This document shows positions 5,361 to 22,025 of a stretch of DNA of 28,627 nucleotides, piece after piece. The notes under the pieces were generated by a model. That model was not told where the DNA came from and searched no databases. It was given only the letters and a program-made list of their open reading frames with translations. The position numbers and the translations under genes were made by a program. Source of the DNA: Octopus sinensis (Eukaryota); the NCBI RefSeq assembly GCF_006345805.1, contig NW_021836749.1, forward strand, positions 1-28,627, in the 5' to 3' direction. Positions within the stretch are counted from its first letter, which is position 1, and every line of letters starts with the position of its first letter.

Positions 5361-5372
5361 TTATAAGCGTTT
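5361..5372 (+). repeat. Left target-site duplication TTATAAGCGTTT
   Basis: 11/12 identical to 22014-22025 and abuts U6 +1 exactly. Confidence 0.7.
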
Positions 5373-5397
5373 GTACTAGCTACGGCGGTACATATTT

Positions 5398-5429
<32 letters not shown>

Positions 5430-5481
5430 GGATGGCCCCTGCGCAAGGATGACACGCAAATTCGTGAAGCGTTCCATATTT
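5373..5481 (+). pseudogene. U6: Full-length U6 snRNA retrocopy (processed pseudogene) forming the 5' part of a chimera
   Basis: From AAAATTGG to CCATATTT it matches the canonical U6 sequence (ACAGAGA box 5413-5419, AGC triad 5425-5427) apart from an ATGG duplication at 5432-5435. The 5' hairpin GTACT-A-GC[TACG]GC-GGTAC is intact. Canonical ATATACT reads ATATTTT, creating an internal T4. No TATA element at about -30. Confidence 0.9.
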
Positions 5482-5494
5482 AAGTGGAGGCGCG

Positions 5495-17500: not shown

Positions 17501-20500
17501 TTCCAGTCCACTCAGCCGGCAAAAATGAGTAATCCTGCGATGGACCGGTGTGTAGTTTCGATTCCTGGACCGGGCGATGCGTTGTGTTCTTGAGCAAAAC
17601 AATTCATTTTTCACGTTGTTCCAGTCCACTCAGCCGGCAAAAATGAGTAATCCTGCGATGGACCGGTGTGTGTGGTTTCGATTCCGGACCGGGCGACGCG
17701 TGTGGTTCTGAGCAAAACACTTCATTTTTCACGTTGTTCCAGTCCACTCAGCCGGCAAAAATGAGTAATCCTGCGATGGACCGGTGTGTGGTTTCGATTC
17801 CTGGACCGGGTGATGCGTTGTGTTCCTGAGCAAAACACTTCATTTTTTGTTCCAGTCCACTCAGCCGGCAAAAATGAGTAATCCTGCGATGGACCGGTGT
17901 GTAGTTTCGATTCCTGGACCGGGCGACGCGTTGTGTTCCTGAGCAAAACACTTCATTTTTCACGTTGTTCCAGTCCACTCAGCCGGCAAAAATGAGTAAT
18001 CCTGCGATGGACCGGTGGTGTGTAGTTTCGATTCCTGGACCGGGCGATGCGTTGTGTTCTTGAGCAAAACACTTCATTTTTCACGTTGTTCCAGTCCACT
18101 CAGCCGGCAAAAATGAGTAATCCTGCGATGGACCGGTGTGTGGTTTCGATTCCTGGACCGGGTGATGCGTTGTGTTCTTGAGCAAAACACTTCATTTTTC
18201 ACGTTGTTCCAGTCCACTCAGCCGGCAAAAATGAGTAATCCTGCGATGGACCGGTGTGTGGTTTCGATTCCTGGACCGGGTGATGCGTTGTGTTCTTGAG
18301 CAAAACACTTCATTTTTCACGTTGTTCCAGTCCACTCAGCTGGCAAAAATGAGTAATCCTGCGATGGACCGGTGTGTGGTTTCGATTCTGGACCGGGTGA
18401 TGCGTTGTGTGTTCTGAGCAAAAAACTTCATTTTTCACGTTGTTCCAGTCCACTCAGCCGGCAAAAATGAGTAATCCTGCGATGGACCGGTGTGTGGTTT
18501 CGATTCCTGGACCGGGTGATGCGTTGTGTTCTTGAGCAAAACACTTCATTTTTCACGTTGTTCCAGTCCACTCAGCCGGCAAAAATGAGTAATCCTGCGA
18601 TGACGGGCCGGTGTGTGTTTTCGATTCCTGGACCGGGTGATGCGTTGTGTTCTTGAGCAAAACACTTCATTTTTCACGTTGTTCCAGTCCACTCAGCCGG
18701 CAAAAATGAGTAATCCTGCGATGACCGGGTGTGTGGTTTCGATTCCTGGACGGGTGATGCGTTGTGTTCTTGAGCAAAACACTTCATTTTCACGTTGTTC
18801 CAGTCCACTCAGCCGGCAAAAATGAGTAATCCTGCGATGGACCGGTGTGTGGTTTCCGATGGACCCGGGTGATGCGTTGTGTTCTTGAGCAAAACACTTC
18901 ATTTTTCACGTTGTTCCAGTCCACTCAGCCGGCAAAAATGAGTAATCCTGCGATGGACCGGTGTGTGGTTTCGATTCCTGGACCGGGTGATGCGTTGTGT
19001 TCTTGAGCAAAACACTTCATTTTTCACGTTGTTCCAGTCCACTCAGCCGGCAAAAATGAGTAATCCTGCGATGGACCGGTGTGTGGTTTCGATTCCTGGA
19101 CCGGGTGATGCGTTGTGTTCTTGAGCAAAACACTTCATTTTTCACGTTGTTCCAGTCCACTCAGCCGGCAAAAATGAGTAATCCTGCAATGGACCGGTGG
19201 TGTGTAGTTTCGATTCTGGACCGGGTGATGCGTTGTGTTCTTGAGCAAAAACACTTTTTTTCACGTTGTTCCAGTCCACTCAGCCGGCAAAAATGAGTAA
19301 TCCTGCGATGGACCGGTGTGTGGTTTCGATTCTGGACCGGGTGATGCGTTGTGTTCTTGAGCAAAACACTTCATTTTTCACGTTGTTCCAGTCCACTCAG
19401 CCGGCAAAAATGAGTAATCCTGCGATGGACCGGTGTGTAGTTTCGATTCCTGGACCGGGCGACGCGTTGTGTTCTTGAGCAAAACACTTCATTTTTCACG
19501 TTGTTCCAGTCCACTCAGCCGGCAAAAATGAGTAATCCTGCGATGGACCGGTGTGTGGTTTCGATTCCTGGACGGGTGATGCGTTGTGTTCTTGAGCAAA
19601 ACACTTCATTTTCACGTTGTTCCAGTCCACTCAGCCGGCAAAAATGAGTAATCCTGCGATGGACCGGTGTTGTAGTTCGATTCCTGGACCGGGTGATGCG
19701 TTGTGTTCTTGAGCAAAACACTTCATTTTTCACGTTGTTCCAGTCCACTCAGCCGGCAAAAATGAGTAATCCTGCGATGGACCGGTGTGTAGTTTCGATT
19801 CCTGGACCGGGTGATGCGTTGTGTTCTTGAGCAAAACACTTCATTTTTCACGTTGTTCCAGTCCACTCAGCCGGCAAAAATGAGTAATCCTGCGATGGAC
19901 CACGGTGTGTAGTTTCGATTCCTGGACCGGGCGACGCGTTGTGTTCCTGAGCAAAACACTTCATTTTTCACGTTGTTCCAGTCCACTCAGCCGGCAAAAA
20001 TGAGTAATCCTGCGATGGACCGGTGTGTGGTTTCGATTCCTGGACGGGTGATGCGTTGTGTTCTTGAGCAAAACACTTCATTTTTCACGTTGTTCCAGTC
20101 CACTCAGCCGGCAAAAATGAGTAATCCTGCGATGGACCGGTGTGTAGTTTCGATTCCTGGACCGGGCGACGCGTTGTGTTCCTGAGCAAAACACTTCATT
20201 TTTCACGTTGTTCCAGTCCACTCAGCCGGCAAAAATGAGTAATCCTGCGATGGACCGGTGTGTGGTTTCGATTCCTGGACCGGGTGATGCGTTGTGTTCT
20301 TGAGCAAAACACTTCATTTTTCACGTTGTTCCAGTCCACTCAGCCGGCAAAAATGAGTAATCCTGCGATGGACCGGTGTGTAGTTTCGATTCCTGGACCG
20401 GGCGACGCGTTGTGTTCCTGAGCAAAACACTTCATTTTTCACGTTGTTCCAGTCCACTCAGCCGGCAAAAATGAGTAATCCTGCGATGGACCGGTGTGTA

Positions 20501-21910
20501 GTTTCGATTCCTGGACCGGGCGATGCGTTGTGTTCCTGAGCAAAACACTTCATTTTTCACGTTGTTCCAGTCCACTCAGCCGGCAAAAATGAGTAATCCT
20601 GCGATGGACCGGTGTGTGGTTTCGATTCCTGGACCGGGTGATGCGTTGTGTTCTTGAGCAAAACACTTCATTTTTCACGTTGTTCCAGTCCACTCAGCCG
20701 GCAAAAATGAGTAATCCTGCGATGGACCGGTGTGTAGTTTCGATTCCTGGACCGGGTGATGCGTTGTGTTCTTGAGCAAAACACTTCATTTTTCACGTTG
20801 TTCCAGTCCACTCAGCCGGCAAAAATGAGTAATCCTGCGATGGACCGGTGTGTGGTTTCGATTCCTGGACCGGGTGATGCGTTGTGTTCTTGAGCAAAAC
20901 ACTTCATTTTTCACGTTGTTCCAGTCCACTCAGCCGGCAAAAAGAGTAATCCTGCGATGGACCGGTGTGTAGTTTCGATTCCTGGACCGGGCGACGCGTT
21001 GTGTTCTGAGCAAAACACTTCATTTTTCACGTTGTTCCAGTCCACTCAGCCGGCAAAAATGAGTAATCCTGCGATGGACCGGTGTGTGGTTTCGATTCCT
21101 GGACGGGTGGTGATGATGCGTTGTGTTCTTGAGCAAAACACTTCATTTTTCACGTGTTCCAGTCCACTCAGCCGGCAAAAATGAGTAATCCTGCGATGGA
21201 CCGGTGTGTGGTTTCGATTCCTGGACCGGGTGATGCGTGTGTGTTCTTGAGCAAAACACTTCATTTTTCACGTTGTTCCAGTCCACTCAGCCGGCAAAAA
21301 TGAGTAATCCTGCGAGGGAGTGTGTGGTTTCGATTCCTGGACCGGGTGATGCGTTGTGTTCTTGAGCAAAACACTTCATTTTTCACGTTGTTCCAGTCCA
21401 CTCAGCCGGCAAAAATTAGTAATCCTGCGATGGACCGGTGTGTGGTTTCGATTCCTGGACCGGGTGATGCGTTGTGTTCTTGAGCAAAACACTTCATTTT
21501 TCACGTTGTTCCAGTCCACTCAGCCGGCAAAAATGAGTAATCCTGCGATGGACCGGTGTGTAGTTTCGATTCCTGGACCGGGTGATGCGTTGTGTTCTTG
21601 AGCAAAACACTTCATTTTTCACGTTGTTCCAGTCCACTCAGCCGGCAAAAATGAGTAATCCTGCGATGGACCGGTGTGTAGTTTCGATTCCTGGACCGGG
21701 CGATGCGTTGTGTTCTTGAGCAAAACACTTCATTTTTCACGTTGTTCCAGTCCACTCAGCCGGCAAAAATGAGTAATCCTGCGATGGACCGGTGTGTGGT
21801 TTCGATTCCTGGACCGGGCGACGCGTTGTGTTCCTGAGCCATGCTCTTCATTTTATACGTTGCTCCAGTCCACTCAGCTGGCAAAAATGAGTAATACTGC
21901 GACGGACCGG
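5535..21910 (+). repeat. 118-bp satellite array, about 139 monomers (length/118, not individually counted)
   Basis: The anchor gatggaccgg recurs at 5641, 5759 and 5877 (period 118). Consensus: tgtgtRgtttcgattcctggaccgggYgaYgcgttgtgttcYtgagcaaaacacttcatttttcacgttgttccagtccactcagccggcaaaaatgagtaatcctgcgatggaccgg. Confidence 0.98.
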
Positions 21911-22013
21911 CGTCATCTCTAGGTGGAGGATTTCTACGCCCCTGAAACCGGGGAACCGGCCCTTATGAGCTTGGCATGGCTCGAGAGGGAACATTTATCT
22001 ATTTAAAAAATTT

Positions 22014-22025
22014 TTATAAGCCTTT
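22014..22025 (+). repeat. Right target-site duplication TTATAAGCCTTT
   Basis: 11/12 identical to 5361-5372; follows the A/T-rich SINE 3' end. Confidence 0.7.

What the first reader, a model, noticed from the sequence alone, without database searches (positions are those of the whole stretch)
5361..22025. U6 snRNA-SINE chimeric retrocopy bounded by a 12-bp target-site duplication 16.6 kb apart
Seen: a full-length U6 (5373-5481) is joined by 4 nt (AAGT) to an intact tRNA-SINE head (5486). TTATAAGCGTTT ends exactly at U6 +1, and TTATAAGCCTTT follows the SINE 3' end (11/12 match). Established: U6-L1 and U6-Alu chimeras in mammals arise by LINE template switching or by RtcB ligation of the U6 2',3'-cyclic-phosphate end. 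Inference: U6 and the SINE were inserted together as one ~380-nt cDNA. The 3' partner appears full-length, whereas mammalian U6-L1 partners are usually 5'-truncated. If the same junction occurs elsewhere, this would be a composite U6-headed SINE family in an invertebrate; I am not aware of one being described, but I cannot search.
Basis: partly seen in the sequence, partly recalled or inferred. Interest (0 to 1): 0.85.

Follow-up and report, generated by a model that had tools for sequence, protein, structure and literature searches.

The report
U6–SINE retrocopy swollen into a satellite
A dead copy of the U6 spliceosomal RNA fused to a tRNA-type SINE sits between two copies of a 12-base target-site duplication, and the SINE's interior has since expanded into a 16.4-kb tandem array of 118-bp units; the fusion and the array are both known kinds of event, here recorded together at one locus.

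Summary
Rfam finds one full-length U6 at 5373-5483 (96 bits). It is followed by AAGT and a SINE head with A and B boxes. TTATAAGCGTTT (5361-5372) abuts U6 +1, and TTATAAGCCTTT (22014-22025) abuts the SINE tail; the chance of such a match is about 0.001.

The finding did not mention that 98% of the interval is a satellite: 139 tandem 118-bp units (5535-21910) made of the SINE's B box plus a CORE-like body. This array lies between the single head and the single tail.

The U6 is not a gene. It has no TATA at -30, no T4 or longer terminator at its end, and a 4-nt ATGG duplication.

Best reading (about 0.6): one chimeric U6-SINE cDNA of about 380 nt, made by a LINE reverse transcriptase, inserted with a 12-bp duplication, and the SINE interior later amplified in place.

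Main rival (about 0.25): a U6 retrocopy with a short A tail was later hit by the SINE. An inner exact 7-mer, TATTTAA (5477-5483 and 22000-22006, chance about 0.02), could be that SINE's own duplication.

No other copy of the SINE or of the junction could be fetched, so a U6-headed SINE family is untested, and it is mechanistically unlikely.

Verdict: new member of known kinds, moderate interest.

The parts
5361..5372 (.). Left copy of the 12-bp target-site duplication, TTATAAGCGTTT; it ends exactly at U6 +1
5373..5481 (+). Full-length U6 snRNA retrocopy. It carries a 4-nt ATGG/GGAT duplication after GCAT, ends in only three T, and has an internal T4 at 5395
5482..5485 (+). AAGT between U6 and the tRNA-like head: either the SINE transcript's 5' leader or nucleotides added at the template jump
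   Evidence: inference
5486..5534 (+). SINE head upstream of the array (A box 5495-5505).
5535..21910 (+). Satellite of 139 head-to-tail units of 118 bp (B box plus CORE-like SINE body). Substitution identity is about 97.7%, with no foreign insertion and no clear higher-order repeat
21795..21910 (+). Last unit. Unit positions 1-45 are identical to an array variant. Positions 46-118 carry 11 differences, which places the edge of homogenisation near 21840
21911..22013 (+). Unique SINE tail, ending ...GGGAACATTTATCTATTTAAAAAATTT
22014..22025 (.). Right copy of the 12-bp target-site duplication, TTATAAGCCTTT (11/12 match)
5477..5483 (.). Inner 7-mer TATTTAA (U6 3' end plus AA). Under the rival two-step history this is the left copy of the SINE's own duplication
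22000..22006 (.). Inner 7-mer TATTTAA, right copy. Under the best explanation it is part of the SINE tail

Best explanation
This is one retrotransposition event followed by local amplification.

1. A LINE reverse transcriptase primed at a nick in the target ...CCTG|TTATAAGCSTTT and copied a Pol III SINE transcript. That transcript had a tRNA-type head, a CORE-like body and a tail ...TATTTAAAAAAUUU. The enzyme read it to its 5' end.
2. It then jumped end-to-end onto the 3' end of a U6 snRNA and copied that to +1.
3. Second-strand repair produced a 12-bp target-site duplication around a U6-AAGT-SINE insert of about 380 bp. The insert was dead on arrival: the U6 lacks its external promoter.
4. 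Later, a 118-bp segment of the SINE was duplicated at a GT microhomology. The segment runs from just before the B box to the end of the CORE-like body.
5. Unequal exchange or replication slippage then expanded and homogenised it to 139 units (16.4 kb). The unique head was left on the left and the diverged distal body plus tail on the right.

Shown directly: the anatomy, the duplication, the lack of gene features, and the array structure. Inferred: the template jump, the LINE partner, and in-place amplification.
For: - U6 is full length and starts at the base after the left 12-mer.
- The 12-mers are significant (0/200,000; P = 0.0012) and limited to 12 nt.
- No comparable repeat flanks the SINE alone. 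The U6 3' end against the right flank gives at best 8/16.
- The U6 is not a gene. The -35..-20 region is ATTTGTCTCGAAAAAG, with no TATA. It ends in TTT followed by AAGT. It has a 4-nt duplication and an internal T4.
The remaining roughly 80 nt are identical. The copy is therefore little decayed.
- The SINE head has A and B boxes. It aligns colinearly with a MIR consensus from that consensus's position 1 (z about 5), consistent with a full-length 5' end.
- Head and tail are single-copy and continuous with the first and last units. There are no foreign insertions in the array.
- Literature: U6 chimeras flanked by a single duplication are made by L1, L2 and RTE LINEs, and the stringent clades make only chimeras. 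U6/Alu chimeras exist but are rare (PMC4476161).
Against: - An exact inner 7-mer, TATTTAA, brackets 5484-21999 (P about 0.02 by shuffling), as a nested SINE insertion would leave.
- The U6 ends in 3 T, whereas genomic human U6/L1 chimeras end in 5-7 T (PMC6789731).
- Four extra nucleotides sit at the junction.
- The distal part of the last unit differs from the array by 11/73. That is more than the near-intact U6 and the 1/12 mismatch in the duplication would predict for purely in-place descent.
- The SINE family's consensus ends, its LINE partner and its copy number are unknown. No second copy was retrievable.
Confidence: 0.6

Rival explanations
1. Two nested insertions. First, a U6 retropseudogene with a short A tail (...CCATATTT-AAAAAA-TTT) was inserted with the 12-bp duplication. 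A variant has a tailless U6. Later the SINE (5484-21999) landed at the U6/A-tail junction and duplicated TATTTAA. The array then grew as in the main explanation.
For: - An exact 7-mer, TATTTAA, lies at 5477-5483 and 22000-22006. The chance of a 7-nt or longer match in the two junction zones is 0.019.
- Polyadenylated U6 retrocopies with duplications are a known class in mammals (PMC4476161 section 7).
- The flanks are dense in SINE-like repeats, so secondary hits are plausible.
- A/T-rich tails are typical LINE endonuclease targets (general knowledge).
Against: - It needs two events, with the second landing within a few bases of the U6 3' end and in the same orientation.
- It leaves TTT unexplained between the A6 run and the outer duplication.
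- The A tail would be only 6 nt.
- The outer target (CCTG|TTATAA) does not look like a poly(A)-primed TT|AAAA site.
- The SINE tail is itself A/T-rich (ATTTATCTATTTA), which makes a chance 7-mer easier.
- The tailless variant has at most a 3-4-bp duplication (ATTT).
Confidence: 0.25
2. A genuine U6 gene, with a SINE that happened to insert just behind it. The 12-mers are coincidental.
For: - The U6 is full length.
- Its 5' stem-loop is maintained by compensatory changes.
- Its 3' 80 nt are unchanged.
Against: - No TATA at -30; the only TATA-like motif is at -12 to -6 and is part of the repeat.
- No T4 or longer terminator at the 3' end.
- A 4-nt duplication in the invariant core and an internal T4 at 5395.
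- The 12-mer pair is significant and ends exactly at +1.
Confidence: 0.03
3. This concerns the array only. The 118-bp satellite was not born from this SINE copy. It was imported by homologous recombination or gene conversion from a pre-existing array elsewhere in the genome, or from a circular multimer of units. That satellite would derive from a related SINE subfamily and would use this SINE copy as its landing homology.
For: - The last unit is identical to array variants over unit positions 1-45 and then differs at 11 of 73 positions. That is a sharp switch of the kind a crossover point would leave.
- The first unit carries a private variant (A18) within its first 45 nt.
- The 11/73 divergence exceeds what the almost intact U6 and the 1/12 mismatch in the duplication suggest for the age of the insert.
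Against: - Edge units of arrays that grow by unequal exchange are expected to escape homogenisation, which gives the same picture.
- Several of the 11 differences are at CpG sites or are clustered: 4 within 6 nt and 2 adjacent. The number of separate events is therefore smaller.
- No other array could be found to serve as donor.
Confidence: 0.2
4. Assembly artefact: the array length, or the linkage of head and tail, is wrong.
For: About half of the units deviate from 118 bp by small indels, many of them 1-nt changes in homopolymer runs and concentrated in the centre of the array. This looks like long-read consensus noise.
Against: - Unit variants are ordered in blocks along the array.
- Both junctions are clean.
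- The two flanks carry a matching duplication, which a chimeric join would not produce.
Confidence: 0.03

Closest known systems
U6/LINE chimeric retropseudogenes of vertebrates (U6/L1, U6/L2, U6/RTE; rare U6/Alu and U6atac/Alu). Sources: Buzdin 2002/2003, Garcia-Perez 2007 and Doucet 2015 (PMC4476161)
   Same: - Full-length U6 from +1.
- Same orientation as a 3' partner that keeps its 3' end.
- One duplication of 6-19 bp around the pair; no U6 promoter.
- The partner here is a SINE, as in the rare U6/Alu cases.
   Different: - The host looks like an invertebrate. The SINE types in the flanks suggest a cephalopod, from memory only.
- The partner is a tRNA/CORE-like SINE and appears full length rather than 5'-truncated.
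- The U6 ends in 3 T, not 5-7.
- There are 4 extra nucleotides at the junction.
- The target is not TT|AAAA.
RtcB-ligated U6/L1 chimeric RNAs (Moldovan 2019; PMC6789731)
   Same: U6 3' end joined to the 5' end of another RNA before or during retrotransposition.
   Different: Ligation needs a 5'-OH on the partner and is strongly reduced with a 5' triphosphate. A full-length Pol III SINE transcript carries a triphosphate, and only 3 T precede the junction. A template jump therefore fits better here. This was not tested.
SINE-derived satellites (squamate sSats, PMC10702118; limpet PcH-Sat from a Nin-SINE, PMC11121367)
   Same: Tandem arrays whose unit is a portion of a SINE, with modest homogenisation.
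   Different: This array sits inside one SINE copy that still has its single head, its single tail and the insertion's target-site duplication, so the seeding copy is identifiable. The unit spans the B box plus the CORE-like domain.
SINEU, SINEs with U1/U2 snRNA-derived heads (Kojima 2015; PMC4494074)
   Same: An snRNA sequence at the 5' end of a SINE, thought to be added by template switch.
   Different: SINEU is a multi-copy family with U1/U2 heads. Here there is a single U6-SINE locus with no evidence of propagation.
CORE-SINEs (mammalian MIR; octopus OR2, as listed in PMC4758252)
   Same: tRNA-type head with A and B boxes, followed by a body that aligns colinearly with the MIR core (CTTGrGCAA..ACTT.A ... 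AAAATGrG.TAAT).
   Different: The tail and the LINE partner are unknown. No comparison with OR2 was possible.

Membership tests
U6 chimeric retrocopy (U6 + LINE-mobilised partner) | Full-length U6 starting at +1 | tested here: met
   Rfam model positions 1-105 of 105, 5373-5483, 96.2 bits
U6 chimeric retrocopy (U6 + LINE-mobilised partner) | One target-site duplication enclosing U6 plus partner | tested here: met
   11/12 match at 5361-5372 and 22014-22025. P = 0.0012 by zone shuffles, and 0/200,000 against background
U6 chimeric retrocopy (U6 + LINE-mobilised partner) | No separate duplication around the partner alone | tested here: inconclusive
   No long repeat (best 8/16), but an exact 7-mer TATTTAA brackets 5484-21999 (P about 0.02)
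U6 chimeric retrocopy (U6 + LINE-mobilised partner) | U6 oligo-T end joined directly to the partner, same orientation | tested here: inconclusive
   Same orientation. Only 3 T, and AAGT intervenes. AAGT may be the SINE's own leader
U6 chimeric retrocopy (U6 + LINE-mobilised partner) | Partner is a retroelement with an intact 3' end recognised by a LINE | not testable with these tools
   No other copy of the SINE and no LINE with the same tail could be retrieved
Functional U6 gene | TATA box near -30 and an upstream PSE | tested here: not met
   -35..-20 is ATTTGTCTCGAAAAAG. The PSE consensus of the host is unknown
Functional U6 gene | T4 or longer terminator at the 3' end and an intact invariant core | tested here: not met
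   Ends in TTT followed by AAGT. There is a 4-nt insertion after GCAT and an internal T4 at 5395
tRNA-derived SINE | Internal Pol III A and B boxes at tRNA-like spacing | tested here: met
   TGGCNNAGTGG-N33-GKTTCGANNCC matches once, at 5495-5549, against 0 expected
tRNA-derived SINE | Recognisable tRNA similarity or cloverleaf | tested here: not met
   ARAGORN finds none. There is no Rfam tRNA hit at E<=10. The head folds as a long hairpin
tRNA-derived SINE | Many dispersed copies with their own duplications | not testable with these tools
   One copy in the window. The public collections searched hold no match
CORE-SINE superfamily | Conserved CORE domain after the tRNA-like head | tested here: inconclusive
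SINE-derived satellite | Head-to-tail units homologous to part of a SINE | tested here: met
   139 units of 118 bp. The first unit is continuous with the head and the last with the tail
SINE-derived satellite | Arrays at several genomic loci (a satellite family) | not testable with these tools
   No host genome was available
snRNA-headed SINE family (SINEU-like, U6 head) | Multiple copies sharing the same snRNA-SINE junction with different flanks | not testable with these tools
   The junction 27-mer is absent from viral contigs.

The most novel reading that the evidence does not exclude
The U6-AAGT-SINE junction is not unique. A master locus, in which a real U6 promoter reads through a weakened terminator into an adjacent SINE, has produced a family of U6-headed SINE copies in an invertebrate. 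In addition, this family's B-box-plus-CORE segment is a recurrent seed of 118-bp satellites.
Probability: 0.06. Interest if true: 0.8.

Novelty: new member of a known kind. Interest (0 to 1): 0.4.

Why it matters
If the single-event reading holds, this locus would show that U6 capture by a LINE reverse transcriptase also happens in an invertebrate with a tRNA/CORE-type SINE as the partner. Such capture is documented for vertebrate L1, L2 and RTE elements, and similar chimeras that do not involve U6 are known from a fungus. My literature searches found no invertebrate case of U6 capture.

Independently, the locus is a clean example of satellite birth. A 16.4-kb array is still framed by the head, the tail and the target-site duplication of the one retrocopy it grew from. 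That allows the seeding duplication (GT microhomology), the direction of homogenisation and the array's age to be studied against an internal clock, namely the U6 and the duplication.

It has no evident cellular function.

Tried and rejected
Looking for other copies:
- Exact-pattern scans found nothing for the head 22-mer, the B-box 23-mer, the body 33-mer and the junction 27-mer in viral contigs. They also found nothing for the body and the head in prokaryotic genome contigs.
- The single metagenome scan with the head 20-mer gave 5 loci. All were unrelated tRNA-like heads or bacterial sequence.
- Conceptual translations of the SINE tail and of all satellite reading frames had no relatives in the protein collection. 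Gene-call look-ups could therefore not lead to host contigs.
- Sensitive blastn of the collapsed SINE and of U6 against the window's flanks found nothing.

Literature:
- Searches for sequence strings gave only irrelevant primer matches.
- Gilbert and Labuda 1999, which shows octopus OR2, is not held.

Readings rejected:
- A segmental duplication as the source of the 12-mers, because the similarity stops at 12 nt.
- A SINE-only long duplication.
- A higher-order repeat structure in the array. Identity is flat across lags 1-12, although G/A variants at unit position 4 (alignment column 5) often alternate.
- Pol III read-through as the source of the array, because every unit contains T5.
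Full report
**What is there**

Rfam finds a single family in the window at gathering score. It is a full-length U6 snRNA at 5373-5483 on the + strand (96.2 bits, model 1-105 of 105, repeated).

The sequence reads as follows:
- ...CCTG-TTATAAGCGTTT | GTACTAGC...GTTCCATATTT | AAGT | GGAGGCGCGTGGCTTAGTGG... 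on the left.
- ...GGGAACATTTATCTATTTAAAAAATTT | TTATAAGCCTTT-ATGTTT on the right, at 22013/22014.

The two 12-mers are the only matches to TTATAAGCSTTT in the window.

Between them, Tandem Repeats Finder reports 139 copies of a 118-bp unit at 5535-21910 (96% matches, score 29882).

**Is the repeat pair more than chance?**

Yes.
- The real left 12-mer found no match of 11/12 or better in 200,000 random 51-nt stretches of the window's non-array sequence.
- Shuffling the 25-nt and 29-nt zones around the two ends gave 11/12 or better in 0.12% of trials.
- The reverse test, random left 12-mers against the real right-hand zone, gave 0.14%. That figure is probably inflated by the A/T microsatellites of the flanks.
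- The similarity does not extend outward (12/16), so it is a short duplication of the target-site kind, not a duplicated segment.

**The U6**

- The Rfam alignment shows all five pairs of the 5' stem intact.
- Against that human sequence the stem carries a double change, G3-C17 to A3-U17. The tetraloop is UACG rather than UUCG.
- The remaining roughly 80 nt are identical except for a 4-nt ATGG/GGAT duplication after AGCAU.

The copy is therefore little decayed, and most 5' differences probably come from the source gene.

It is nevertheless not a gene:
- The -35..-20 region is ATTTGTCTCGAAAAAG, with no TATA.
- The only TATA-like motif (TTATAA, -12 to -7) is part of the duplication.
- The 3' end has three T followed by AAGT, rather than a T4-T5 terminator.
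- The AC-to-TT change creates an internal T4 at 5395.

**The SINE**

An A box (TGGCTTAGTGG, 5495-5505) and a B-box-like element (GTTTCGATTCC, 5539-5549) occur at tRNA-like spacing. The combined pattern matches once in the window, against none expected.

Neither ARAGORN nor the Rfam tRNA model at E<=10 recognises a tRNA. The head folds as a hairpin rather than a cloverleaf. 'tRNA-derived' therefore rests on the promoter boxes.

The alignment starts at that consensus's position 1 and runs through the CORE motif. The score is 38, against 21 +/- 3 for shuffles.
- This suggests a CORE-SINE-like element.
- It also suggests that the 5' end at 5486/5487 is a complete SINE 5' end.
- Octopus OR2 is listed as a CORE-SINE (PMC4758252). 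I could not obtain its sequence.

Head and tail occur once each in the window.

**The array**

Segmentation gives 139 contiguous units with no foreign insertions.
- Mean substitution identity is about 97.7% and flat across lags 1-12, so there is no clear higher-order repeat.
- Variants are arranged in blocks: a very homogeneous stretch of units 10-53 (99.2%) and more varied ends.
- About half of the units deviate from 118 bp by small indels. Many of these are 1-nt changes in homopolymer runs, and they are concentrated in the centre. They may be long-read consensus errors.
- The unit runs from just before the B box to the end of the CORE-like body.
- The unit-to-unit joint (...GGACCGGTGT|GTGGTTTCG...) can be derived from the single-copy sequences ...AAGGTTGTGGTTTCG... 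and ...GGACCGGCGTCATC... through a GT microhomology.
- The first unit differs from the consensus only by a private A at unit position 18.
- The last unit is identical to array variants over positions 1-45 and then carries 11 differences in 73 nt. Homogenisation therefore stops near 21840.
- Every unit contains T5. The 16-kb block therefore cannot be a Pol III transcript copy and must have grown as DNA.

**How it most likely arose (confidence about 0.6)**

A single chimeric cDNA.
1. A LINE reverse transcriptase primed at the target and copied a SINE transcript to its 5' end.
2. It jumped end-to-end to the 3' end of U6 and copied U6 to +1.
3. Integration duplicated 12 bp.

This is the structure described for vertebrate U6 chimeras (PMC4476161):
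- They are made by L1, L2 and RTE elements.
- The stringent clades make only chimeras.
- U6/Alu and U6atac/Alu cases are reported as rare.

A short SINE template explains why the partner is full length, whereas L1 partners are usually truncated.

The AAGT may be the SINE transcript's own 5' leader, because Pol III starts about 10 nt upstream of the A box. Alternatively it may be nucleotides added before the jump. Both are inferences.

The terminal TTT after A6 fits a Pol III transcript that ended in a downstream T run.

RtcB ligation needs a 5'-OH partner and is strongly reduced by a 5' triphosphate (PMC6789731). It therefore fits a full-length Pol III transcript less well.

**The main rival (about 0.25)**

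An exact 7-mer, TATTTAA, occurs at 5477-5483 (U6 ...TATTT plus AA) and at 22000-22006, just before AAAATTT and the outer 12-mer. A match of 7 nt or longer between the two junction zones arises in 1.9% of shuffles.

Read this way, the history has two steps:
1. A U6-oligoA retrocopy formed first. This class is known in mammals.
2. The SINE (5484-21999) later inserted at the U6/A-tail junction with a 7-bp duplication.

Points against this reading:
- It needs a second insertion at exactly that spot and in the same orientation.
- The TTT between A6 and the outer duplication is unexplained.
- The A tail would be very short.
- The outer target site does not look poly(A)-primed.
- The SINE tail is A/T-rich in its own right.

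I rate the single event several-fold more likely. Only the SINE family's consensus ends can decide.

**Other readings**

- A real U6 gene with a SINE behind it fails on promoter, terminator, core integrity and the position of the duplication (about 0.03).
- A propagating 'U6-headed SINE family' could not be tested. It is mechanistically unlikely, because the tRNA-type promoter would start transcription at the SINE's own 5' end. It would need a master locus driven by a real U6 promoter (about 0.06).
- For the array, import from a pre-existing satellite by recombination remains possible (about 0.2). The evidence is the sharp switch in the last unit. The 11/73 divergence also sits uneasily with the nearly intact U6 and the single mismatch in the duplication. 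However, escape of edge units from homogenisation and CpG or clustered changes can explain the same data.

**Limits**

No host genome was reachable. Scans of viral, metagenome and prokaryotic collections, and protein-level searches with translated SINE and satellite frames, found nothing related.

The taxon is not established. The flanks are packed with microsatellites and other SINE-like repeats. One of them, at 4564-4759 on the - strand, resembles an octopus SINE as I remember it. That is a lead only.

**Verdict**

- The locus is a new member of two known kinds, a U6 chimeric retrocopy and a SINE-derived satellite, combined at one site.
- Interest is moderate (0.4). It would rise sharply only if the junction proves to be shared by a family.

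Noticed in passing
window 78-1304: Two tandem copies of an element of about 615 bp (82-93% identical). Each ends in a trinucleotide microsatellite: (TAA)n at 78-145, (AAT/GAT)n at 682-745 and (CAA)n at 1284-1313.
   Followed up: partly
window 2151-2393 and 3963-4208: Inverted pair of a roughly 245-bp repeat (91-95% identical). It brackets 1.5 kb of (ATAC)n/(AT)n microsatellites. These are probably two opposed copies of another short interspersed element.
   Followed up: partly
window 4564-4759 (-) and 23115-23332 (+): Two copies (72% identical) of a different tRNA-like SINE (B-box-like GGGTTCAGTCC), each next to a TA/CA-rich microsatellite. From memory it resembles an octopus SINE, which is the only hint at the host taxon.
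   Followed up: partly
window 1379-1503, 2826-2951, 27665-27785; also 22802-22942, 22974-23103, 23544-23655: Two further low-copy dispersed repeat families in the flanks (71-79% identical). The flanks hold roughly one SINE-like repeat per 1-2 kb.
   Followed up: no
window 21836-21844 and 21974-21982: A 9-nt inverted repeat, GAGCCATGC / GCATGGCTC, links the diverged part of the last array unit to the SINE tail. The first arm coincides with the cluster of 4 differences from the array consensus, so that cluster may be a templated change or an original hairpin of the SINE.
   Followed up: partly
window 22061-22156, 23795-24279, 24461-24739, 25346-25844: Very large microsatellites right of the insertion: (GGT)n(GTC)n, (ATCT)122, (AC)141 and (TCT)168. 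No credible protein-coding ORF was seen anywhere in the window.
   Followed up: no
window 6800-21400 (array interior): About half of the units deviate from 118 bp by small indels, many of them 1-nt changes in C, T or A runs, while the first nine units are all exactly 118 bp. This suggests consensus errors of a long-read assembly rather than biology.
   Followed up: partly
L001, L003, L004, L005 (metagenome contigs Ga0056128, Ga0056126, Ga0209671, Ga0209146): The 20-mer GGCTTAGTGGTTAGGGTGTT also heads unrelated tRNA-like SINE-type elements in host-associated metagenome contigs. The A-box region is therefore shared across distinct elements and is not diagnostic of this family.
   Followed up: partly
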